DNA from: Glycera tridactyla
Lineage: Eukaryota
Assembly (NCBI GenBank): GCA_965644265.1
Contig: OZ286473.1
Coordinates: 38,588,074-38,628,000, forward strand
Length of the DNA: 39,927 nucleotides
Direction of reading: 5' to 3'
The position numbers and the translations under genes were made by a program. The notes beneath the pieces were generated by a model that searched no databases, had not been told where the DNA came from, and was given only the letters and a program-made list of their open reading frames with translations. Shown here piece after piece: positions 13,791 to 36,603 of this stretch. The stretch's first letter is position 1. Each line of letters begins with the position of its first letter.

Positions 13791-15499
13791 GTTTGAGCTG
13801 TTGCCGATGTTGCACTTGTTGTTGGAGTAAATGTAAACTATATGTAGTTCAGTCAACACTACGTGTCGTTACTCAATGTTCTAATATATACCTATTGTCT
13901 TTTGAATATAGTATATATGTGTTTTATTGTTCTTAATGGGTACATCGAGTCGTCGAATATAGATAACTTTGAGAGTAAAATCAATATAAACATATGGTTG
14001 TAGTACTAGTAGTTGTTGTTTAAGTTGTTGTCTAAGATGGTGATGTTGGTTATGACAATGGCAGCGACAAGGACGAAAACCATTAAGGCGAAAATAGTGA
14101 AGATGGAGATGGTGGTGAAGGTGGTGGCTGTGGCAGTGGTGATAGTGGCAGCGGCGGCAATTTTGGTAACTGCAGTTTTGTGTCGATTGTCGTGGAGGCA
14201 ATATCGTGCTGATGTTTCTTTTTTGGTGGTGATTGTGGTATTAGTAATCGACTACGCGGATACACTGACATTGAAATACTCAGGAAGCTGATCATTGCTT
14301 GGCAATAAACTAATATATTTATATTTTGGAAGGAAGGAGACACACAACTGGAGTTTTCGAATGAAAAGACAGGCAGGGAGATTGGCTGGTCATCTCGACA
14401 GATCCGCAACATATATGATCTTCAGGATGCTATGTGAGACAGTAGTACCCACTAAAATGTACCTGTCACATTTGGATTTGGCCGACTAGCTATATTGCAG
14501 AGAAGCCCTACGGACAGACCATGGGGTATGCTTCCATATTTGATCACTAATCGACTCAGGAGAGTGTGATGGAAGATGCTGTCTCCCAGGCATCGACTCC
14601 AGATTACTATCATTATTCCAGCCGAATTAACATTTGCTTTACAGATCACTTACTCACTGGTAGAGGATTTGTCGACATGCCAACAGGTTTGCCCAGAGGA
14701 GCTGGTCTTAGTGCACCATTGTGGGCCATGGGTCGGCGCATTTGGATTGCTGCCATCTTCCTTCCCACGCTTACCTTCTGAACATACAATTCTACCAGAA
14801 ATTTGGTCTTCATTTTTTTGCAGCACTATCGTATTTGACGTGTAATCCTTCNNNNNNNNNNNNNNNNNNNNNNNNNNNNNNNNNNNNNNNNNNNNNNNNN
14901 NNNNNNNNNNNNNNNNNNNNNNNNNNNNNNNNNNNNNNNNNNNNNNNNNNNNNNNNNNNNNNNNNNNNNNNNNNNNNNNNNNNNNNNNNNNNNNNNNNNN
15001 NNNNNNNNNNNNNNNNNNNTGACAGCAGGCGACAGCATCTCTTCCAGTGATCTGTAGACATCCCTCCTAAGCTACCGCTTCTATGTGTGAAGGCCCATCA
15101 ACCCACACACTTTGTTAGATTAGTAAAGACAATAGCGAGCTAGTGGCAATGAGCACCATGTCAGCAGTTCGGACAGAGATCACTGACATAATTGAGCATC
15201 ATCAATTTTTCATCATCATAATTGTAATTATCGTTATCGTTGTTTCTCGTCATTCCCTTGTCCTTGCAATCTTCCTGCTCTGCTTTGTCCTCATCTTCAT
15301 CACCATCATATGCATATGAAAGATGGACGTGTGCTTCCTCGAAACTGAAGGCCACGCCTGTCCTGAGTAGAAAACCATAGTGGTTGAGCAACAAGGTGAG
15401 TAAATCGAGGCGAGATTACGTAGAATTACCTTAGATACCACCAAATTTCCACCGCAGTAATCCCAACATATTGATCTGATTGGCAATTTAGCACATTGC

Positions 15500-16130: not shown

Positions 16131-19100
16131 TAAAACTCTACAAATCTTCAAAATTATATTTCTCTTGAATTCCCCACACCTGAAAACATACATCTAGACA
16201 CTAAAACCACTTTGCTAGCATCATTAGATCTTGAGATATACTCCAAAGACCAATTCCCTTCAATCTTGGATCTCTCGTAAAGCTCCAGGGTGAGAGGTCC
16301 ACACCCACTCGATTCTGAACCTGGGTACCCTAGAGATGGAGAAAATGCAATAAAATGCCCCCCCCCCCAATTTCTTTCAAGGTTCAGCCCCAAATGCCAA
16401 TTGGCTGCTGGACTAAAGATGATGGTGATCCAGTTGGGCCATTAAGTTGACATTTCAGATGCCAGAGAACAAAACGGTGAATTTCTTTTCGAGTGGAGTG
16501 TTGAAACAGACACGACAGGGCTTTATCGACCACAGCCTCGAGATGGGGTTCATGTTGTCTGATCAGATTGTTCGAGTGTGTATCACAAGCTTGGTGGGTG
16601 TACCTACTATAAGGGCTCTTAACTAAAAGGGAACAGATTGACTACAAGGCAGGAAATGTGCCTTCCAGTCAGTGTCTCGTCATCTTTCAAATGATGGGTG
16701 ATGGCCCATCTTTTGAGATGGAGGTAATGTTCACAATTCGCTCGAAAAGGGCTCCATATGTACATAAAAGAGAGACAAGAATTTGTATAATGGCCGTCAA
16801 ACAAAAGATTCGTGGTCGAACCCTACACACTTTCACTTTGAGATAACTTCACAGGTTTGATGCCATCGTATCTATCATGTGTGATACGTTGCATCACATT
16901 GAACTGTGATTGTGATCCTTCATAGGGATAAGGGATTTCATTTGGTTGAAATGATATGTGTCATTTTATCTAATGCATACCAATGGAAAACAATAAATGT
17001 CGAAAGGCCAAGCGTACTTTTATGATATATCAAGCATTTGAAATCTCCTTATGGATTAAATGTATGAATTTTGCTGAAAATGGTTGGAAAGTTGTATCGT
17101 TAATTCTTTGCCAGTACAAACTCGTACATATTGACGAGCCAGGTGGTGCAGAAATCATATTGAATCAGAATATATTGATGAGCAATTCTCTGTGATCCAT
17201 GAACACATTAAGAATGAGTGTGTTCAAGAATGTGGCACAGAAAATATGTTGAACAGAAAATATGTTGAGCATTGTCCATTGCAATATCACCGATCTACCC
17301 ACCCACTCCTATATCACAAATGCACTCATGGAAAATATGTATATGTTCACACATTTGCCTATTTTTATGATAAACACCCCCTATACATGTACACGAAAGC
17401 CGCCTATTTATTCCTATATTTATTCACCCACTTATTTATACATCTATCTATCTATTCGTATTGGCACTTATTTGTACCCATGTATACCTCTGTGATAATA
17501 CTATATGAAACAGTTTGCCTATTCATCAATCACGCAGAAACCAAACCTCAGCCTCGCTATTTTATCTCATCTTACAATAACCACCTGATGACAATGGGCA
17601 ACCACCCACCAGGACCTGAAAAACCATACTCAGACCCCCGTTAACCCTGAGCATGGTTAAGGATGACAGAGTATGTATACTAATTCAAACTAAACCCACT
17701 CATCTAGTACACTATGCAACCTTAATATGGTTGCCGAGTCTTGTAGGCCCGCCAGGGGCCGGGGGTCAATTGTACTAATACCTAACCACTGCAATACTTG
17801 TAGATGACCTATGACTCGTTAATGAAAAATATGTTTTGTTATGTTATATGTTGCAATGGGCAGTATTATTTTTCATCAATACTTGTGTACATCATATTGG
17901 GGACAAGATGCCCATCTGAAGACGGAACTTGTTTTCAAATAAATCCAAAGGGGTTGATTAATGGTAAGTATATATTCTTGTCTCTGGCGACATTTTTGTC
18001 TCTTTCATCCATAATATTTATACTGTTTCGAAGAATTCAAATAGGTGAATGGATATAATGTGTCACAGGTCTCACGTAACAAGTGTAAATATTGTTAGCC
18101 AGTCCATATTTTTTTGCAAGGTTCTGAAAGTATCTTCCTCGTGAACTCAGCTGAGTACTATGACTTTTTCTTTCATACAATGGATAATCCAATATTTATT
18201 TGTGGATAATGGCAAAACTACGGACTTCTGGATGAGAAAATACAGCAGTCCCTGAAAAATTAAACGACCGTTGCTATTTTTGCCGCATTCATGCACCATG
18301 GATGTTTCTGTTATGAAGACAAGTATAATGAATTCATGGTTAGGACTTGTTTGTAAGCGTGTATCATATGATCATACAGAGTATAGAGTGGATGGAGTAG
18401 CTGCTGTATTTAACAATAGAGTGTATTGACATATGAATAGACACCGCTTCTCAGTACTGGAATAGGTGGCTAGCAAAACGCCCACATCCCCTCTGATCTG
18501 TCCGCATGTTAACATATATTGCCAAATGCCCACGCATCTCTGCTGTTCATTCAGCCAGCTAGCAGTTCCTTCACATCGCCACTGGTTCTTGGTTCTAACC
18601 ATTGATACTTCATCCTTGCGCTGTGACCATCCTTTTCCCTACTTCTGCTCCTACTTCTACTTCGAATACTATCATCACTCTCAAAAATTTACGTTAAATT
18701 ATCATGCATTGTTTATCTGTCCGTGACACTCAACAATATTATCACTGTTAAATTTACCTCATATCATTGTGTTCTTTTTATTAGTATGTACCACTCAACC
18801 GATATATACTGTATCTTTATGATCACTATGTATATGTTAAAATTCTAAAAAATATATAGAAAAACCAATGAAAGTATCTCGCTGCACAGGAGTGCATTAG
18901 TAGGTGGGAAATAGGTGTGAACACCGTGACCAAAAGCCGCTTTATAGGGGCGGGAAAATTTGGACATATATGCATGTGTAGTATTGAATACAGTATGAAT
19001 ATGTTTTTCATTTTTTTTTCCTGGTCACAAAAATGAAATTACTGTTTCACTNNNNNNNNNNNNNNNNNNNNNNNNNNNNNNNNNNNNNNNNNNNNNNNNN

Positions 19101-19699
19101 NNNNNNNNNNNNNNNNNNNNNNNNNNNNNNNNNNNNNNNNNNNNNNNNNNNNNNNNNNNNNNNNNNNNNNNNNNNNNNNNNNNNNNNNNNNNNNACTACC
19201 ACTAAGATAACTACTACTACTACCATTGCCATCGCTGATATCACAACTGCTACTGCTACAAGAACAAATAGAACAAAAACAACAACATCACCCACTACCA
19301 CTACTGCTAATACTACTACTACTACCATCATTACTACTGCTATAATTACCACCGCAAATTATTCAGAAATTAGCATTACATCAGCAGCCATATTTCTGCT
19401 GAGTGAATTTGAGTACCTTGCTCATTATCCATCTGAATCCTAATCTCGTTTGATGAGCAATTGAAAGTACACTGTATTATCAATTATTCTCTTTTTCATT
19501 TATGGTCATATTAGTGGAAAATGTTGATGCATTGATCCATTCTATATACGAGTGTGCTAGGCATTGGTCTTGGACATTAGAGTGAGAATGTGTGAATATA
19601 CTTGCGAGAGCTCATGACGAATTGCTCCCTATTTACTACCACCACCACTTTCTTTTGAGACCCTTTCCGGATTGGAACCAAGAAATGAGAGTAATTGAA

Positions 19700-26230: not shown

Positions 26231-27896
26231 CAAATAACAAGCTCATGCACAGGCTGTTCTATTTGTGATTAGCTTGCAGTCTCGTGTTTGAGTGCAGGTG
26301 TTTTCATATATGAATGTCGGCGTGTGAGGAGTTCATGAGTTGACGTGATTCTTCCACTTCAGACAATAGATGATGGATATAAATTTATCTTCGAACGATA
26401 AGTGATTTGAAAGCACTGCCATACAAAAATCGCGGAAACGAATCGGCCTATATGGCTGGTATCCAANNNNNNNNNNNNNNNNNNNNNNNNNNNNNNNNNN
26501 NNNNNNNNNNNNNNNNNNNNNNNNNNNNNNNNNNNNNNNNNNNNNNNNNNNNNNNNNNNNNNNNNNNNNNNNNNNNNNNNNNNNNNNNNNNNNNNNNNNN
26601 NNNNNNNNNNNNNNNNNNNNNNNNNNNNNNNNNNNNNNNTAGATATAGGCAGGCAGAAAGAGGGAGAGAGAGAAAGAGAGATGGATAGATATTGGATAGA
26701 TGAAAAAATACCCCATCATATGAAATCCAATGGTCTACGGAATACATGCAGAATCCCTGATGACACTAACCAAGATGTCACTGTGAACTTCCATAATTCC
26801 GAGTAGAAACTCAAACGAGATTGGAAACACTCTAACGTTTCTTTTTTTTTTTTTGAGTAAGGTCCTTTGTGATGGCTTCACAATTCTAGAGTAAAGTTAT
26901 CACGAGGACACGCAACGGCAAAATGGAACATATAATTGGAGAGACAGCATCAGAAAATTGGCAATTTCAAGTGCTTGGGGATCGTATTGCCAAGCTGTAG
27001 TACATCTGAATGTACTTCCATGGTCATTTTGGTTCTGTTGGCATTCACGTGGAAACCTACGCCATTCTGCCTGCATCAAAGCATTTGTGAAACCGGCAGG
27101 TTGGCAACTTTACAGTAAAATCATCTTAGTTTTCCTTCTTCCCGTGTCTGATGAAAAATGCTCATGATCCCCGCTGATGGGAGGAGTGCAGTCTACCACG
27201 GCTACTCAGCCTACAGTTTGTAATGTCAAGGTTACTGTCACATCCTAAAGTAATACGTACGTGTCACAAGTTGAGAATTTTCATCGATTTGAATTCTGAC
27301 TGGAGTGTATGGCACATGTGACGATCATTGAAACTGATTCAGGAAAATTTGGATGCTTTTGGATGCAAAGACGANNNNNNNNNNNNNNNNNNNNNNNNNN
27401 NNNNNNNNNNNNNNNNNNNNNNNNNNNNNNNNNNNNNNNNNNNNNNNNNNNNNNNNNNNNNNNNNNNNNNNNNNNNNNNNNNNNNNNNNNNNNNNNNNNN
27501 NNNNNNNNNNNNNNNNNNNNNNNNNNNNNNTAATTATAATGATTTCACTAACAACAACGATAGTGATATTGATATCAACAATGATAATGGTAATAATGAC
27601 AAAGGATATTATAATAGAAATAATTATGAACTTGAAAAAAAAAATGAAGAGGACTAAGAGGTTATGCTGACATGGTTTGTCCTGAGCCTCGACAGGGGTT
27701 TATTACATATAATATCAAGCATTCAACTAGCATCTCAAGAAGCACGCCATAGACTAGCATGCATCTCTCCGAAATATCTCTCCAATATGGCAGCTGTTAT
27801 AATCGTCATAGATAATTCATGAACGTTGCTCCGTCTAGACATTCTGCAATACGTTTTGATAGACAGGCCTAATGAAGTCGGTGCCCTTGATGCAGC

Positions 27897-29375: not shown

Positions 29376-32047
29376 TCATCATGGTACATCCGGCAAGATG
29401 GCGAGCTAAACGAGGGTTGTTAGGTATTGGGGAAAATAGTGGCAGGGGATTGGGGATGATGTTATAGCTAATTTGTCCTGTGAAAGGAGGTCAATATGGA
29501 CGGGCCCTTCAAGCTCGGTCTTCATCCCTGGACTAGGCTGATTTATTGGGTGTGTGGGGTTGTGGCCGGTGTAGGTGGAAGATAGGATTGAACTTCAGAT
29601 TTAAGTCAGATACCCAGTTAGATCCACCTTTGAGAGTGGGTTTTATCGATATGACACTTGTATATCCGATGATCAAAGTCATCTTCTTAATGCGTTATGT
29701 ACATGCATCTTCTACGCACTCTCACGGCCACTGTACTCTGATGAAGGTTCCACACTATCCTGCTGTTACTGTGCATAGTCTTTGATTCAATCTCGTTCTG
29801 CAATGTATATTTGTCTTATAGGTATATCTATCTTTTGATGCTGTCTTGCCATTCAACTATGTGATGCTACCGCCATTCAACACATGATCAGTAGAATTGA
29901 GCCATCTTTCTACATCAATCCGGCATTTATCATGCAATAGTACCAATTCTTCTTTCGATATCGTCCATAGCATCCTTCATACTGGATCTCCATGTTCCTT
30001 AGTGACTCCTCACAACATTTACATCGTGAATGTATTGTATATAATCATGTTGTTTGTTTAGAAGTCGACCGTGTGAGCATGTAATATGATTGGCCTATTA
30101 CGAGCTCAGGTCCAGAAAGCATGTGTGGGGGTCTGCCTGAACTATTAGCCACCACCTCTCCACTACTCAATCACATCAAGATGCTGTCTTCTCATACACT
30201 TTTCTCTCTACTTCTTTTATTTCCTTTCCTGCCATAATATTTTTGGGTGATATATTTCATGTACTAGAAAGGTATAGTTTTTGTGACGTTCGGTATTTGA
30301 ATGAACAAGGTCTTTAAATGACGCTTTCGGTTTCGTAAGGGTTTGCGAGAATGGTGCAAGCAGAGGAGAGCATCCAACTTTCATTGATCAGAGACACATG
30401 TCATGTATAATCCTTTACTTCGATATATAACATCCAACTTCAACTACACCCGATCGGTAACATCTTGATCTGACTCGCACCCCTAACCCACACTGAGCTG
30501 AACGCAAATCTGATCTAATTTTCAGTGCTTGGAAGACATTCTGGTCAATTGAAGTGGTCGAGAACAAGGCTTCATGTAGCAAATCTTCATTGAAACATTT
30601 TAAACGACTCACGTATATCCGATACAAAAATTTAAAATTTAATGGATCGATTTGTTGGAGTTTGATAGTATGTATGGGTCAAAATGAGTATATATGCATC
30701 ATGCCCCTGAGACATTATGCTGACTGCAGACATCTATCTCTCAAACCCTGCACACAAGATGATGGAGAACAAAAAAGCGGAAGTTGCTGTTAGTCCAGGG
30801 ACAACTCTACTGACCACAATACTACAGATGCACTTTCAGATAGCATAATTAACCATCTGAGTGGGTGTAGGCTCAGACGCAAGAACAATAGAATGATTCA
30901 CATAAAGGGATGGACCTGAAGTCGATGCATGAGGTTCGGAAAGGACATAATGATCATGTGTTCAGTACTGAACAGAAATGTGAATGTGGGAGGTCAATGG
31001 TGTGGGCCACTTATATAATAGTGTTATGGTAATTACGGTCGAAGCCTATAGCGATAATCTCTCTAGAGGATTTATGTAGTGCATCTCGTCGCACGTGATC
31101 CAGCCAAATTACGCAGCATCAGCAATGATAATCATCCATACACTCCAATCAGCATATCCACCGGTGAATAACTCCAGAGGAGTACATAATTAGTGGGACT
31201 AGCACCATGAATCAAAATCACTAGGCCCTCGGGGTACACTTCGGATTTCATTTCGATTTTGAACTCACATTTGTAATCGTCATAGTAATACGATTGAACA
31301 CGACAAACAGGTTCATCATCAGGATCACGATTTATACATGTGCATCAAATGCTGAATACAATATGAATCTACTGAAATTAAATCGATGTTGATGATATTA
31401 TGACGTAGATGAATTAATTGAAAGAATGAGATGAAAAGGATCAAAATGAGTTGCAATGGTCATACAGATAGCACACATGCTAGTATTCATGTATCTTTTG
31501 ATTCCTTCTCTACTTTCTGAATCTCCCTTGATACAACATATTCAAGTTCAAATTCAAATTCAAGTTCTCCAATAGGCACTCAAAATGTAGATTCACAGTG
31601 AAACACTGGATCTGAACTGAACTGAATTTGGTAATAAATGTCATACAAGTAACCACTGTCTACTTGAAACGTGATAACGTGATAATGTCTACAGACAGAA
31701 CTACATATACTATCATGTTGAATCACTTACCTATCAATACTCCAAGTCAATCTTGCTATGAAGTACAGAGGAAACATGACTTCCCATGCCTTATGAGAAC
31801 TGAAATATGAGTCAATAGTATGAGCAATGAGCTGTGCATCTGTGTCATTTCAGGCAAGTAACGTAGGGTGTCCTAATATGGTCACTACTTTCAGTTCCCA
31901 CCCTAGGGTTGGATGTATGATCTGAGTATCCTTCCTGGACAGTTTCCATCTGTTTTTTGCACTTCTTTTGTGTTGAATTTCGAAAAAAAAATCAATTGTA
32001 GCTGTATTTTTTAGGCTTTTAGAGCGATTCAAAAATGGAAAGTTAGT

Positions 32048-32162
32048 GGTGACGATATTTGGACCCCGGGTACCTAATATCGTCACAAGGGGGGTCATAA
32101 TATCGTCAGGGGGTCCTAATATCGTTAGGGGAATCACAAGGGGGGTCCTTTCATCGTCACCC
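32048..32162. repeat. Left subterminal cluster of GGTCCTAATATCGTCA-like motifs
   Basis: Five imperfect copies: GTGACGATATTTGGACC (reverse), TACCTAATATCGTCA, GGTCATAATATCGTCA, GGTCCTAATATCGTTA and GGTCCTTTCATCGTCA. Confidence 0.8.
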
Positions 32163-32760
32163 AATCAAAATAAGATCTTATAATCGAAATCATGGCATGG
32201 AAATGCAATTTTTATCACCATTCTTCAAGGCGAATAATTAAACTCAGTAATTAATACAACAAATGATCCTTCTCAGATCAGTACAGCAGTGTTTCATGAT
32301 ATGAAATTCACAGCCCATGTTGGACATTTCAAAGACTGATCGACAGATGTAATAAAAGCAAGGCAGCCATTAAAATAAATGTTTATTGAATGTCTGAACA
32401 GTAAAGGACACAGCTTCTAAATGATCAAATTTACCATTCCATCGACTCATACATATTTTCATGACAATAGCTGTTGCAGAAAAAACAGATGATTATGAAG
32501 TTGTCAAATGACGAATATCACCAAGCATGACTTACATCAGTGAACTCAAAACGAAACAATAAAGTGGAAACATTTTTCACATGTATCTACAAAGGATATG
32601 GGGTCCATTCCAAATTCTCTTTCTGTGTTTGGTCCTCACATATCCTTGCTTTCAAGTCCATAGGAAAGGATCAGAGTTATTGAAAATATTTAACAAACAT
32701 GAACATTGCAACACAGAATCAAACATCAAAACATATTGATTGCATGGCAAACACTTGCAT

Positions 32761-33154
32761 ATATTTGGTATCAAAATGTGAGTTTTGATAGGACGCATTG
32801 ATTCAGAGCACTTATTTGATGAACATGGAGATAAAAAGGTGTAGGCTGCTAATAAATGGTATTTTCTGGTGATTTTCGGGATCAGGCTCCATAAAAGCTC
32901 AACTGAAAATTTAAGAATCACAGTGACCAGATGTCTGGTTGTAATATTCAGAAGGGACTATCACTCAGGTGTTGAGAACATACAGTCTCAAGTGTCCCTA
33001 GTGGTGGATTAGTATTTCAGAACCCAATGCTGATTTTCAGATGGGCATAAAGGGGCAAAACTAAGGAGAGGATATCATTAACCTCATATGACCTTCCCAT
33101 GGCACAATGTGGCCATATGTGGTATAAAAATGTAGGTCTTGATGGGATACATTG
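32761..33154 (-). repeat. Left arm of inner inverted repeat (~1.1 copies of a ~355-bp unit)
   Basis: The reverse complement begins CAATGTATCCCATCAAGACCTACATTT and aligns by eye along its length with 35659-36060 (shared AAATACTAATCCACCACTAGG, ACAACCAGACATCTGGTCACTGTGATTC, GAAAATCACCAGAAAATACCATTTATTAGCAGCC). Confidence 0.9.
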
Positions 33155-33159
33155 CCACT

Positions 33160-35400
33160 AAAGTTGAGCAGGAGGGTTGCAATGTGTGGTTTGCTGATAA
33201 ATGGCTATTTCATATATTTTCTCCACAAAGTGGAGTATTGCTTCACAAAGTATCAAATCCTCAGAAACCCTATATGTTATCCCTTCTTTCAGTATGTCGA
33301 GTTGATGCTATGACAACCAAAACTGAATCATTTGAAACAGCATGATCTCTATTCTATTTCTATAATGTTCAAAACAACTGATGCAACATGATATATTGAC
33401 TGCCAGGCTTGCTGAATTTCAGGGAAGGTGATAAATGGGGAAACCAATGTACTGGTATATCTCAGGCTTCTTTGAAGGCTATAATACCATGGCAGTACCG
33501 CATTTTACATGCCTATGAGTCCTCACAATACAGTTTCATCACCAAAACAAAGCAGATAGATAGACAAAGATGCTGCTTTGAGGCATGGTGTGCATTGCAG
33601 GATTCACTCATTTACTGAATGCCAGGAAGAGATGGTCTGTCGCAGAGCCATTCAGAAGAGTTCTTGTCAGTCATTTAATGGCCATGGCTATAGTATGGTA
33701 AGATGGGGGAGGCCAAGAACTCACACCTACTGAATCAAGAGAGATGAAAATGACTTCACAAATGTGATCCAAGAATTTGAAGAATCCCTGTATCCTCTCA
33801 ATGATGGGTAACTAATCACAATCTCTACTTTGTTGCCAGTGCAAAACCGAGCTCAGATGAAGTAGCCAATGTCCTTCTTGTTGTCAGTGATATTGGTACA
33901 CTCTGATTCATCTTGGAATTCAAGGACAAGTGTTTTGAGCAGCCAATTCAATACAAGATTGAAACTCTGTACAGGTTGCCCAAAAGATTCAATTATAACT
34001 GAAAGACATGAAAGTGCCAATTGTATGTTGTGCCAGAGACATGTTTGGGTGTTTAGTTGATCTTGCTGCCCCACAATATATGGTCTTGAGCAGTGTCTTG
34101 ACTTAACCTCTTATTAGTGCACCACTATCTCTAGCTCCATAAAGCAGACCAACAAATCAACACTCAGAAAGACAATTGTAGCCTATTAGATCCTGTTCAA
34201 TGAGTAACAGCAGATGGCTACCCAAGTGCTTTCTTCACACAAGTTTCGAAATATTCCTGTGACCTATGGTGGTGTTGCCAAAGTATCACTCGAGAGACTA
34301 TATGATCTGGCACTGACTAGCTGTTCATATTGTATGTTCATATCCAGATGGCCCATCTGTCAAAGCACGAACACAACAATCTCATTGAGACATTCAATTC
34401 AAATGAAATACATCATCACATACAGGACCTCTTCAGAATAAGCCCAGTGCCTTAAATCAGGCACTTTGTCCTCTTCATCCAAAATGGTCTTATGCATGTT
34501 TTCTGCCAACAAGTGATCACTGAACAACTATGGCACACTACCAATCCAATAAAAGTACACAGGTCATTCGAGAGAACTTCCCATGGCTGGGAAGTTCTCA
34601 TGAAGGAGGAGAAGCAAGAATGATGTATCATGGCTCATACCATGCTAAGCGAGTTCCTGATCAGAATCTTGTATTTCGATGCAATGAGACAGATGTGTTT
34701 CTTCTGCTTCTGTATTATGTCCACTACTTTTAAGCCATCACTCAGATTGACCATGGTCTCTGTTGTCAAACATTAAGTAATCTGGCTGAGTACCTTGGTG
34801 CTGATATGTGTGAGACACTTCTTAGATTCCATGCCTTCACAGGGTGTTACTACAGAGCAGCATTTATAGGACAGGGAAAAACAGGACCTGATGATCCAAT
34901 ATCCCACTGTCATTGAAGCCTTCTCACAAGCAGGCATGCTCCTGTCTCAGTCTGCATAGCACGTGAGAAGTTTGTCCGTATGTGGCAGCTCCAGGTTGCT
35001 CGTAGATGGTGCAAGATCTCAGCACTTTGTTGAAATTTGTGATTGAAAATCAGTGGTACCTCGAGCAAATCAAAGCATCTGATAAAGATAAAGATGGAGA
35101 TGAAGGGAATAAACTATGAGACACAATTTACAGAATTCAGACCAGAAGGACATGGATGGCTGCTCACCTGGGGCAATCTGGAAATGATCTACAGTGGAAC
35201 AAAAAAATATCCCAATGGCATTAAGTTTGACACAAGTGACATTACCAGTGACACCAAGAATAGTGATAAATACATGGCTGAGGTGTCCGCTGATAGGGGA
35301 GATTATTCAGAATGAGAATGTCATGTATCATTCAGAAGGGTACAGTTAATCTCACCTACACTCTGCCATGACAAGTTTGGATTCATGTCACTGACAATGA
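33160..35400 (+). pseudogene. Decayed Academ-type transposase C-terminal half plus XPG/FEN1-like nuclease domain (many stops and frameshifts)
   Basis: Manual translation gives collinear blocks: CIAGFTHLLNARKRW (~33590), NLYFVASAKPSSDEVANVLL (~33820), RDMFGCLV (~34036), FRNIPVTYGGVAK (~34245), PDGPSVK (~34345), SSHEGGEARMMYH (~34593, cf. SSHEEADTRIILH), RCNETDVFLLLL (~34680, cf. RSPDTDV), AEYLGADMCETLLRFHAFTGCYYRAAFIGQGK (~34785-34880, cf. FHAFTGCDYTSAFxGKGK) and PEGHGW (~35142). Confidence 0.8.
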
Positions 35401-35658
35401 AACCTACTTTCTTTTTGACATTTGCCCGTTTTTGTATCATTCAGTGAAACATATGTTATTTCAATTGTAAATATCAATAATTCACCTGTTATTGGTATGG
35501 ATGTAACAGTCACTGACATGTCATTATGCAAATGCAAGTTTTTCTGGGCAGGTCGGGAAAACACGTCCATCGTACAGGAAGAGGTTTCTGAAGATTCAAC
35601 ACTTTGTGGAGCAATTGTATACTTCACTCTTCTGTACATCTACTGTCATGGTCCTAAT

Positions 35659-36603
35659 CAATGTATCCCATCAAGACCTACATTTCGATACCATATATGG
35701 CCACATTGTGCCATGGGAAGGTCATATGAGGTCAATGACATCCCTTTCTCAGTATTGTGCATTCATGCCCATCTCATCTGAAAATCAACATTGGGTTCTG
35801 AAATACTAATCCACCACTAGGAACACCTGAGAATGCATGTTCTGAACACCTGAGTGATAATCCCTTCTGAATATTACAACCAGACATCTGGTCACTGTGA
35901 TTCTTCACTTTTCGGTTGAGGTTTTATGAAGCCTGATCCTGAAAATCACCAGAAAATACCATTTATTAGCAGCCCACACCATTCAATCTCCATGTTCATC
36001 AACGTAAGTGCTCTAAATTAATGTGTCATGTCAGAACCTACATTTTGATACCAAATATGACCATATTGGGCCATCAGAAGGTCATATGATGTCAAGAACA
36101 GCCTTCTTCCGCTAGTGCATTTTTTTGCCGACCTCAAATCAACAATGGTCTCTCAAAAACTGATCCACCACTAGGAACACTTAAGACTGCATGTTCTAAA
36201 CACCTGAGTATTAGTACTATCTGAATATAACAACCAGATATCTGGTAACTGCTATTCTTTACTTTTTGGATGAACTTTATGAAGCCTTATCCAAATAAAT
36301 CACAGAAAAATACCATTTATCAGCAGGCAACATCTTCCAATCTCTCTGTACATCAACGTTAGTGCTCTAAGTCGGTGTGTCTTATCAAGACCAACATTTT
36401 GATACCAAATATGACCATATTGGGCCATCAGAAAGTCATATGAGATCCAAAACAGTCCTTTTCCAGTGTTGCGTCATTATGCCTGTCTTCAAATCAACGA
36501 TGGGCTCTGAAATACTAATCCACCACTAGGAACACTCAAGACTGCATGTTTCAAACACCTTAGTGATAGTCCTTTCTGAAAATAACAACCAGACATCTGG
36601 TCA
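35659..36603 (+). repeat. Right arm of inner inverted repeat: tandem array of ~2.7 copies of a ~355-bp unit
   Basis: The landmark CCACCACTAG recurs at 35811, 36165 and 36520 (periods 354 and 355). GATACCAAATATGACCATATTGGGCCATCAGAA and ACAACCAGA(C/T)ATCTGG recur at the same period. Confidence 0.9.

What the first reader, a model, noticed from the sequence alone, without database searches (positions are those of the whole stretch)
32761..36603. Inner inverted arrays of a ~355-bp unit clamp the coding core at an identical breakpoint
Seen: both arms begin at exactly the same base (CAATGTATCCCATCAAGACC; 33154 on minus, 35659 on plus), with ~1.1 units on the left and ~2.7 tandem units on the right. 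The left arm matches the innermost right unit best. The N-terminal part of the transposase is missing right at the left arm. Inference: either expandable tandem repeats inside long TIRs (foldback-like, a possible satellite source) or repair of an internal deletion by copying the right arm. A read-through transcript would form ~400 bp of dsRNA able to trigger silencing.
Basis: partly seen in the sequence, partly recalled or inferred. Interest (0 to 1): 0.7.

Follow-up and report, generated by a model that had tools for sequence, protein, structure and literature searches.

The report
Dead long-TIR transposon nested in another
The two inverted repeat arrays are the normal, roughly 1-kb terminal inverted repeats of a DNA transposon family, each built of 2.7 tandem 354-bp units; this copy is dead and truncated on one side, and it was carried to at least seven places in the genome inside a second transposon, which makes it an ordinary if neat case.

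Summary
The left arm is 32761-33154 (1.1 units, minus strand) and the right array is 35659-36603 (2.7 x 354 bp). The arms meet the core at the same unit base, and the left arm matches the innermost right unit best (89% against 77-80%).

The shared "breakpoint" is the family's normal TIR/core boundary. It is seen in about 35 arms, including full-length 5.2-kb copies that carry 2.7 units on both sides. These copies have a unique terminus ...CTCTTGGAC and TA flanks.

The window copy lost the outer 585 bp of its left arm and 0.73 kb inside the core. It sits inside a different non-autonomous TA-flanked element (31861-38153). That composite is present as seven two-ended copies at 94-98% identity on different chromosomes. 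One further copy is "empty", and one (C17) has the core flipped between the arms.

A tree places the left arm with the same-side arms of independent copies, so it was not copied from its own right arm. Unit number is almost fixed, and no satellite-like arrays were seen.

The core is not a recognisable transposase. It is the decayed C-terminal part of a roughly 1,500-aa transposon protein with a FEN/XPG-like nuclease fold. Three intact 1,521-aa copies with the same termini exist elsewhere in the genome. Long dsRNA is thermodynamically possible but untested.

The parts
31859..31860 (.). TA flank (target-site duplication) of the outer element, left side
   Evidence: All six aligned copies have TA immediately outside ACGTAGGG...; the flanks beyond it are unrelated.
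31861..38153 (+). Outer non-autonomous DNA transposon carrying the inner remnant (composite of about 6.3 kb). Its terminal inverted repeat is ACGTAGGGTGTCCTAATATGG.
   Evidence: Homology with copies on C40, C26, C18, C29 and C1 at 94-98% stops exactly at these ends. The exact 23-mer end occurs at 20 places, which include 7 two-ended copies.
31868..32160 (.). Cluster of six 18-bp subterminal motifs (GGGTCCTAATATCGTCAC-like) of the outer element. These are probably transposase-binding sites (inferred).
   Evidence: 10 matches in the window against 0.02 expected, all near the two outer ends.
32761..33154 (-). Left (N-side) arm of the inner element, truncated. It holds one full 354-bp unit plus 40-46 bp of the next; the outer 585 bp, including the terminus, are missing.
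   Evidence: Full-length relatives continue for 2.7 units plus the terminus on this side.
33155..33556 (+). Family-typical core sequence next to the left arm, colinear with the full-length copies.
   Evidence: Window 32761-33557 aligns without a break to L031 8566-7809 and to L033 and L034.
33556..33557 (.). Point of a 0.72-0.74 kb internal deletion relative to full-length family members. It is shared by all composite copies.
   Evidence: L031 7071-7809, L033 5401-6134 and L034 5321-6041 are absent here. Contigs of run X1 diverge at exactly 33556/33557 (table 7).
34002..35240 (+). Decayed ORF remnant with many stops and frameshifts. It corresponds to residues ~884-1352 of the 1,383-aa relative P0155 and includes the ...ETDVFLLLLY... 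and ...HAFTGCYYRAAF... motifs of a FEN/XPG-like nuclease domain.
   Evidence: tblastn; profile search gave 222 relatives, best E 1e-16; a model of relative P0012 matches XRN1, FEN1, EXO1 and Rad2.
35659..36012 (+). Right (C-side) arm, unit R1.
36013..36366 (+). Right arm, unit R2.
36367..36603 (+). Right arm, partial unit R3p (about 236 of 354 bp).
36604..36637 (+). Unique terminal sequence of the inner family, ending ...GACCCCCAGCTCTTGGAC.
   Evidence: The end is identical in about 40 arms with unrelated flanks. There are 192 genome matches to the 20-mer against 1 in the control.
36638..36639 (.). TA that follows the inner terminus, as it does at every copy of the family.
36640..38153 (+). 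Right part of the outer element. It includes (AC)n at 37231-37297, (AG)n at 37363-37434, (CA)n at 37473-37507, and subterminal motifs at 37634-37766 and 38112-38129.
   Evidence: In the 'empty' copy it joins directly to 32760.
38154..38155 (.). TA flank of the outer element, right side.

Best explanation
The region is the inside of a nested, two-layer DNA transposon.

Inner layer (32761-36637). This is a dead copy of a cut-and-paste family whose terminal inverted repeats are about 0.98 kb long. Each repeat consists of the same three old tandem units (354 + 354 + 236 bp, 77-82% alike) plus a 34-bp unique end. TA follows every end. Because both arms are the same repeat read in opposite directions, they necessarily meet the core at the same unit base.

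This copy lost the outer 585 bp of its left arm and 0.73 kb of its core. It therefore cannot move on its own.

Outer layer (31861-38153). This is an unrelated non-autonomous element with 23-bp TIRs, arrays of 18-bp subterminal motifs and TA flanks. After it acquired the inner fragment, it transposed as one unit. That produced at least seven two-ended copies, all sharing the same truncation and the same deletion.

The long inverted arms remain recombinogenic. In the C17 copy the core is flipped, the arms are chimeric and one unit is lost.

Shown: the anatomy, the copy structure, the boundaries, the TA flanks, the empty copy, the flipped copy, the side-specific grouping of the arms, and the FEN/XPG-like nature of the ORF remnant.

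Inferred: that the TA is a target-site duplication; that the 18-bp motifs and the unit arrays bind transposase; that the three intact 6.7-kb copies with a 1,521-aa ORF are the autonomous source; and how the truncated fragment entered the outer element.
For: Inner family:
- The 354-bp unit matches at least 40 scored loci, each with the same R1 (about 90-99%), R2 (about 78%) and partial R3 pattern.
- Full-length copies L031, L033 and L034 have arms of about 0.97 kb on both sides. In L031 the inner boundary lies at the same unit base, 4937/8172.
- The terminus ...CTCTTGGAC followed by TA is common to about 40 arms whose flanks differ. There are 192 termini and 365 unit motifs genome-wide, against 1 and 4 in the controls.

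Composite:
- Copies on C40, C26, C18, C29 and C1 align to window 31858-38155 at 94-98%. Homology ends at the outer TIRs and the flanks are unrelated.
- The exact outer TIR is found at 7 two-ended places.

Layers are separable:
- The empty outer copy at C26:48.8 Mb joins 32760 to 36640.
- The same joint is present in a contig of an independent run.
- The empty copy is the most divergent of the eight.

Arm origin:
- In the tree, the window's left-arm unit groups with the N-side arms of L031 and L034. Its right-arm unit groups with C-side arms.

Recombination:
- The C17 copy has a flipped core and chimeric arms.

Protein:
- The ORF remnant is related to proteins of 1.36-1.6 kaa.
- A model of relative P0012 matches XRN1, FEN1, EXO1 and Rad2.
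- Three intact 1,521-aa ORFs are bracketed by exact family termini 6.7 kb apart.
Against: The junctions of the inner fragment with the outer element are not those of a clean TA insertion. The empty site reads GCATACTTCAG. The filled site reads GCATA|TATTTGG...GGAC TA ATA|CTTCAG, which leaves 3 extra bases at the right junction. How the fragment entered is therefore unresolved. It may have been captured already truncated at a break, or it may have inserted whole and then lost its left end.

Only one empty copy exists, and it is itself truncated at 37022.

Their arm structure and their link to the 5.2-kb family rest on exact 18-mer and 20-mer matches and on their spacing.

The catalytic (DDE?) nature of the protein's N-terminal part is unproven. 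It gave only sub-threshold DUF6589 hits.
Confidence: 0.85

Rival explanations
1. The left arm was created when an internal or terminal deletion was repaired by copying the innermost unit of the element's own right arm in inverted orientation.
For: The left arm matches R1 best, at 89%. The element does carry deletions.
Against: The arm/core junction is colinear with independent full-length copies, which have a complete left arm at the same place. The left unit clusters with the N-side arms of L031 and L034, not with its own right unit. L1-R1 divergence is 10.7%, whereas the orthologous arms of sister copies differ by 1-3%.
Confidence: 0.03
2. The whole 6.3 kb is one transposon with layered TIRs, and the 354-bp arrays are an inner TIR layer of the same family rather than a nested foreign element.
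For: Both layers have TA flanks. An earlier first-stage note (s1-322461) read the element this way.
Against: The inner family occurs at about 190 termini without any outer sequence and with its own ends and flanks. The outer element exists without the arrays. The outer-type TIR has its own relatives, found as pairs about 5 kb apart. The termini and the subterminal motifs of the two layers are unrelated.
Confidence: 0.05
3. The copies of the composite arose by segmental duplication or by assembly duplication, not by transposition.
For: The copies are 94-98% identical over 6.3 kb.
Against: Homology stops at the same base at both TIR ends in every copy. The flanks are unrelated and lie on seven chromosomes, and TA is present on both sides.
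Confidence: 0.02
4. The inverted arms are kept because the locus serves as a hairpin-RNA (siRNA or piRNA) source that silences the family.
For: A transcript through both arms could pair 365 of 394 nt (-596 kcal/mol against -192 for shuffled controls), with five uninterrupted helices of 21 bp or more.
Against: No RNA run holds the stretch. The arms are simply inherited TIRs that diverge at a neutral-looking rate: 10.7% between arms and 1-3% between sister copies. No promoter evidence was sought. This would be a by-product, not the reason for the structure.
Confidence: 0.1

Closest known systems
Galileo (P superfamily) and the Drosophila Foldback element: transposons with long, internally repetitive TIRs
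   Same: The TIRs are kilobase-scale and built of tandem repeats. Complete, deleted, two-TIR and solo-TIR copies coexist. Rearrangements and sequence exchange mainly affect the TIRs (PMC3573991 abstract). Here I see 5.2-kb copies, putative 6.7-kb copies, pairs of termini 0.4-1 kb apart, a flipped core and arms that have lost a unit.
   Different: The encoded protein is not a P or THAP9-type transposase. It is a roughly 1.5-kaa protein with a FEN/XPG-like nuclease part. The flanks are TA. Unit number is nearly fixed at 2.7 rather than highly variable.
Tetris of Drosophila virilis (a foldback-like element whose TIR-220 repeats seeded a satellite)
   Same: It is a non-autonomous element with tandem repeats inside the TIRs. 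It shares TIR ends with a MITE and is probably moved by another element (PMC4079207 abstract).
   Different: No kb-size arrays of the 354-bp unit were seen. No fetched locus and no listed motif match shows a run of more than three units, so the satellite-seeding step is not observed here. Only 100 of the 365 motif matches were listed.
AcademX lineage of the Academ superfamily (transposase plus XPG-type nuclease)
   Same: A large transposon protein is associated with an XPG/FEN-like nuclease. An earlier first-stage note called this element Academ-type. That AcademX encodes a nuclease and makes 3-4-bp TSDs is stated in PMC10045372.
   Different: The flanks here are a 2-bp TA, not 3-4 bp. No Academ reference protein was available, so homology of the N-terminal part could not be tested.
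Tc1/mariner/pogo elements with long IR-DR type TIRs
   Same: TA flanks on both layers, and repeated presumed binding motifs near the ends.
   Different: The coding remnant, its relatives and the 1.4-1.5-kaa proteins all lack Pfam hits to Tc1, mariner or pogo transposase domains. At about 1,500 aa, the protein is several times larger.

Membership tests
Foldback-like / long-internally-repetitive-TIR DNA transposons (structural class: FB, Galileo, Tetris) | TIRs that are very long relative to the element | tested here: met
   Arms of about 0.97-0.98 kb on each side of 5.2-kb elements (L031 3967-4937 and 8172-9147, 87-97% complementary).
Foldback-like / long-internally-repetitive-TIR DNA transposons (structural class: FB, Galileo, Tetris) | TIRs composed internally of tandem repeats | tested here: met
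   2.7 units of 354 bp in each arm.
Foldback-like / long-internally-repetitive-TIR DNA transposons (structural class: FB, Galileo, Tetris) | Repeat number and TIR length vary among copies | tested here: inconclusive
   About 30 of 35 arms have the same R1-R2-R3p layout. L025, L030 and the C17 copy have 1.7 units. A few arms are internally deleted. None is expanded.
Tetris-type satellite seeding | The same unit forms long arrays outside the element | tested here: not met
   The fetched loci and the 100 listed motif places show runs of at most three units. The remaining 265 motif matches were not listed, so absence is not proven.
AcademX (Academ superfamily) | Encodes an XPG-type nuclease | tested here: met
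   Relatives of the ORF remnant fold like XRN1, FEN1, EXO1 and Rad2 (Foldseek E 5e-5 to 3e-3, probability 1.0). The conserved motifs HEEADTR, DTD and HAFTGCD are present.
AcademX (Academ superfamily) | Target-site duplication of 3 or 4 bp (PMC10045372) | tested here: not met
   Every end is followed by TA and then a variable base. The left and right flanks of L031 and L033 share only TA.
AcademX (Academ superfamily) | Academ-type DDE transposase | not testable with these tools
   No reference sequence or profile was available. The N-terminal part gives only sub-threshold DUF6589 matches (12-20 bits, cut-off 27) and no PDB sequence match.
Tc1/mariner/pogo | TA target-site duplication | tested here: met
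   for both layers. That the TA is a duplication rather than part of the end is inferred.
Tc1/mariner/pogo | DD(34-41)E/D transposase with N-terminal HTH domains | tested here: not met
   No such Pfam domain was found in the ORF pieces, in the relatives or in the 1.4-1.5-kaa proteins.

The most novel reading that the evidence does not exclude
The inner family may belong to a lineage of eukaryotic cut-and-paste transposons that has not been described. Its features would be a single protein of about 1,500 aa that joins a DUF6589-like (possibly DDE) core to a FEN/XPG-like 5' nuclease, TA target duplications rather than the 3-4 bp of AcademX, and kilobase TIRs made of 354-bp units. Three copies with intact 1,521-aa ORFs and exact termini suggest it could still be active in this genome.
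Probability: 0.2. Interest if true: 0.55.

Novelty: new member of a known kind. Interest (0 to 1): 0.3.

Why it matters
The 'clamp at an identical breakpoint' is just how a long TIR looks, so the striking feature of this finding has a plain explanation.

What remains useful for annotating this genome:
- A clean example of one dead transposon amplified passively inside another, in seven copies.
- Direct evidence that kilobase inverted arms flip their core and lose units. This is the same instability that makes Galileo-type elements drivers of inversions.
- A pointer to a family with a FEN/XPG-like nuclease protein, TA flanks and three apparently intact copies. Its superfamily assignment (Academ-like or other) is open and would interest transposon taxonomists.

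The roughly 390-bp near-perfect hairpin potential, present at seven or more loci, is a testable candidate source of small RNAs against the family.

Tried and rejected
- Pfam scans of 16 stop-free ORF pieces from the window and three full-length copies gave only chance-level hits.
- Pfam on ten relatives, and NCBIfam on two long relatives, gave nothing above threshold.
- PDB sequence searches with two profiles gave nothing meaningful.
- The protein atlas returned only unnamed eukaryotic clusters.
- No copy of the 5.2-kb family has an intact ORF, and most share the same stops. I built no consensus.
- The reads tools found one small non-RNA run with a 0.09 share of words. It confirmed the empty joint, the deletion point and the element end, but it says nothing on expression or on long-read support.
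- The AcademH paper (PMC7165386) is not held.
- I looked for a 3- or 4-bp TSD and for a clean TA insertion of the inner fragment into the outer element. Neither fits.
- The N runs in the window were left untouched.
Full report
**Setting**

The window is C39:38588074-38628000 of a 2.04-Gb, chromosome-scale eukaryotic assembly. It is presumably an animal. The nearest protein clusters come from echinoderms, arthropods, cnidarians and molluscs. I did not try to name the species. The six N runs in the window were left alone.

**1. The observation**

It holds as described.
- The repeat finder gives inverted pairs at 32816-33043/35775-36002 (228 nt, 93%) and 33039-33154/35659-35774 (116 nt, 88%). Their inner ends are exactly 33154 and 35659.
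- TRF reports a 354-bp period with 2.7 copies at 35656-36601.
- The left arm (32761-33154) is 394 nt, or 1.1 units.
- Global identities between units are: L1-R1 89.3%, R1-R2 77.8%, R1-R3p 80.3%, R2-R3p 81.9%, L1-R2 76.6%, L1-R3p 79.9%.

**2. The arrays are the TIRs of a family**

A genome search with unit R1 hit at least 40 scored loci out of 256 first-look candidates. Nearly every locus has the same three-part pattern: a unit 90-99% like R1, then one about 78% like it (R2), then a partial one covering positions 1-236.

When each unit is assigned to its best window unit, the order R1-R2-R3p is seen in about 30 of 35 arms.

Full-length copies carry this array on both sides:
- L031 on C4, L033 on C29 and L034 on C42 have a core of about 3.2 kb between two arrays.
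- In L031 the arms are 3967-4937 and 8172-9147 (87-97% complementary). The inverted repeat stops at the same unit base as in the window.

Outside the partial third unit there are 34 bp of unique sequence ending ...GACCCCCAGCTCTTGGAC. TA always follows, and then unrelated DNA. Genome-wide this 20-mer occurs 192 times against 1 in the control. An 18-mer common to all units occurs 365 times against 4.

So the 'identical breakpoint' is the ordinary inner edge of a roughly 0.98-kb TIR. The units are old, position-specific duplicates, not freshly expanding repeats.

Variation exists but is modest:
- L025, L030 and the C17 copy have 1.7 units.
- A few arms are internally deleted.
- No arm is longer than 2.7 units.
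- Some pairs of termini lie only 0.4-1 kb apart, which points to MITE-like derivatives.

**3. What is wrong with the window copy**

Relative to L031, L033 and L034, the window aligns in two blocks. Positions 32761-33557 cover the arm plus 400 bp of core. Positions 33556-36639 cover the rest. Between them 0.72-0.74 kb is missing at 33556/33557. On the left, the arm stops at 32761, so 585 bp (1.6 units plus the terminus) are gone.

Contigs of an independent public run diverge at exactly 33556/33557 and at 36639. That is what other family copies would produce.

**4. The second layer**

Beyond the inner remnant, the window is flanked by sequence that is not part of the inner family. Copies on C40, C26, C18, C29 and C1 align to the whole of 31858-38155 at 94-98%. 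In every case homology ends at the same bases.

The ends are a 23-bp perfect inverted repeat (ACGTAGGGTGTCCTAATATGG...). TA lies outside on both sides and the flanks are unrelated. Ten copies of an 18-bp motif cluster near the two ends, against 0.02 expected.

The exact end occurs at 20 places in the genome. Seven of these pair into two-ended elements of 5.9-6.6 kb on C1, C17, C18, C26, C29, C39 and C40. Related end variants occur as pairs about 4.3-5.7 kb apart, which may be the autonomous relatives.

All two-ended copies share the left-arm truncation and the 0.73-kb deletion. These events therefore happened once, before the composite spread by transposition of the outer element.

**5. The layers can be separated**

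At C26:48.8 Mb the outer element's left part runs straight into its right part, reading ...CACTTGCATACTTCAG... with window 32760 joined to 36640. The same joint, 32758|36640, is in a contig of the independent run X1 (table 5).

Over 1,283 aligned sites, this empty copy is the most divergent of the eight (2.1-2.9% against 0.8-2.6% among composites). Under midpoint rooting it falls outside them. This is compatible with the ancestral state but does not prove it.

The junctions are not those of a clean TA insertion. The filled site reads GCATA|TATTTGG...CTTGGAC-TA-ATA|CTTCAG, which has three bases more than expected at the right junction. There are two possibilities, and I cannot decide between them:
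- a fragment that was already truncated, with 2-3 bases of donor flank, was captured at a break;
- a whole element inserted, its left end was later resected back to the flank, and a 3-bp change occurred in the empty lineage.

**6. The left arm was not copied from the right arm**

I labelled each R1-type unit by the core end it abuts (N-side or C-side of the ORF remnant) and built a tree rooted with R2.
- The window's left unit sits with the left units of its sister copies (100/95). That group sits with the N-side arms of the independent elements L031 (96/82) and L034 (82/90).
- The right unit sits in a C-side group with L031, L007, L035 and L019 (83/79).
- Orthologous arms of sister copies differ by 1-3%, while the two arms of the window differ by 10.7%.

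The arm-copying repair model is therefore rejected.

**7. The inverted arms do recombine**

In the C17 copy (L062) the outer parts and the truncation are the same as elsewhere, but the core runs in the opposite direction.
- The left arm switches from 'window-left' identity (97%) to 'window-R1' identity (93-98%) about 130-150 bp from its inner end.
- The right arm starts with about 118 bp of 'window-left' sequence (95-99%). It then continues in R2, so one unit is lost.

This is the signature of exchange between inverted arms, here combined with a unit contraction. It is the kind of TIR dynamism described for Galileo (PMC3573991).

**8. The coding core**

None of the stop-free pieces hits Pfam. 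All family copies are broken, and most carry the same stops.

One frame on the + strand (34524-34913) keeps the motifs ...NETDVFLLLLY... and ...RFHAFTGC(D)Y.... A profile built from four such pieces found 222 proteins at E up to 1e-3, with a best E of 1e-16. None has a Pfam family, and none has a name.

An AlphaFold model of the relative P0012 (mean pLDDT 74) matches XRN1, XRN2/Rat1, FEN1, EXO1, Rad2/XPG and T5 D15 (Foldseek E 5e-5 to 3e-3, probability 1.0). This is the PIN-like 5'-nuclease fold. It fits the invariant acidic motifs of the family, HEEADTR and DTD.

Longer relatives (1,363-1,607 aa) carry this domain at the C-terminus. Upstream of it they show only sub-threshold DUF6589 matches.

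Mapping the 1,383-aa relative P0155 gives the following:
- The window keeps about residues 884-1352, at 34002-35240.
- The 0.73-kb deletion removes about residues 414-740.
- Even the 'full-length' 5.2-kb copies start only at about residue 414.

So an N-terminal part is indeed missing, but not 'right at the left arm'. Calling the protein a 'transposase' is unproven. I note conserved motifs in the N-terminal two-thirds (FDNxD, VDxTLEQTVN) that would suit a DDE-type core. This is my inference only.

**9. A likely autonomous source**

The genome holds many intact intronless ORFs of this protein family. Among them are three of 1,521 aa, at C4:65801203-65805246, C10:80058107-80062150 and C17:20431456-20435499.

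Each is bracketed by exact matches to the inner family's 20-mer terminus in inverted orientation, 6.7 kb apart. Exact unit motifs lie about 100 bp inside each end.

Their arm structure is therefore unknown. The 854 bp between ORF end and terminus leaves room for at most about 2.3 units.

**10. dsRNA**

Co-folding the two arms as parts of one transcript pairs 365 of 394 nt (-596 kcal/mol, against -192 for shuffled controls). The longest uninterrupted helix is 45-61 bp, and there are five helices of 21 bp or more.

The idea is physically sound. However, the only public run holding any of the stretch is a small non-RNA data set, so it remains untested.

**11. Comparison and verdict**

Structurally this is a foldback-like, long-TIR DNA transposon of the Galileo/Tetris kind (PMC3573991, PMC4079207), but with a different protein and with TA flanks.

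The earlier first-stage note calls the 6.3-kb unit 'Academ-type' with layered palindromes. The nuclease fits AcademX. The 2-bp TA does not fit the 3-4-bp TSD given for AcademX in PMC10045372. The 'layers' are also two separable elements. A Tc1/mariner assignment fails on the protein.

The finding itself is an ordinary consequence of TIR architecture plus nesting. The remaining interest lies in three things: the hitch-hiking amplification, the documented flip, and the unclassified and possibly live family behind it.

Noticed in passing
G000 C4:65799394-65806100, C10:80057253-80063960, C17:20430602-20437310 (not in the window): Three elements of about 6.7 kb with exact inner-family termini in inverted orientation enclose uninterrupted 1,521-aa ORFs of the FEN/XPG-like protein family. 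These are candidate autonomous, possibly active copies.
   Followed up: partly
L062 (G000 C17:79994500-80004499), 1964-7865: A composite copy whose core is inverted between the arms. The arms are chimeric and the right array is reduced to 1.7 units, which indicates recombination between the inverted arrays.
   Followed up: yes
L064 (G000 C26:48794000-48803999), 3823-5105: An 'empty' copy of the outer element, with 32760 joined to 36640. It is itself truncated at the position matching window 37022. The same joint is in an independent run's contig.
   Followed up: yes
L034 (G000 C42:12358000-12367999), around 3939 and 8996: The 30 bp outside the two ends of this full-length copy are reverse complements of each other, so the inverted symmetry extends into the flanks. 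This could be a larger palindromic duplication or an insertion into another inverted repeat.
   Followed up: no
G000 C10:99698301-99698746, C18:87429605-87430199, C1:9459380-9460421: Pairs of inner-family termini in inverted orientation lie only 0.4-1.0 kb apart. These are probably MITE-like or two-TIR derivatives of the family.
   Followed up: no
G000, e.g. C4:34044173-34049837, C10:85087088-85092251, C11:93481249-93486022: Variants of the outer element's TIR (TAACGTAnGGTGCCCTAATATCG) occur as inverted pairs 4.3-5.7 kb apart on many chromosomes. These are possibly the autonomous relatives of the outer element. Their coding content is unknown.
   Followed up: no
window 37231-37507: (AC)n, (AG)n and (CA)n microsatellites lie inside the right part of the outer element and are shared by its copies.
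   Followed up: no
window 35633-35658: The 26 bp just inside the right arm resemble the end of a unit (family D3). The right array is therefore slightly longer than the inverted repeat, and there is no counterpart next to the left arm.
   Followed up: no
window 9070-9236, 14852-15019, 19052-19194, 26467-26639, 27375-27530, 39689-39896: Six runs of N, either masked sequence or gaps.
   Followed up: no
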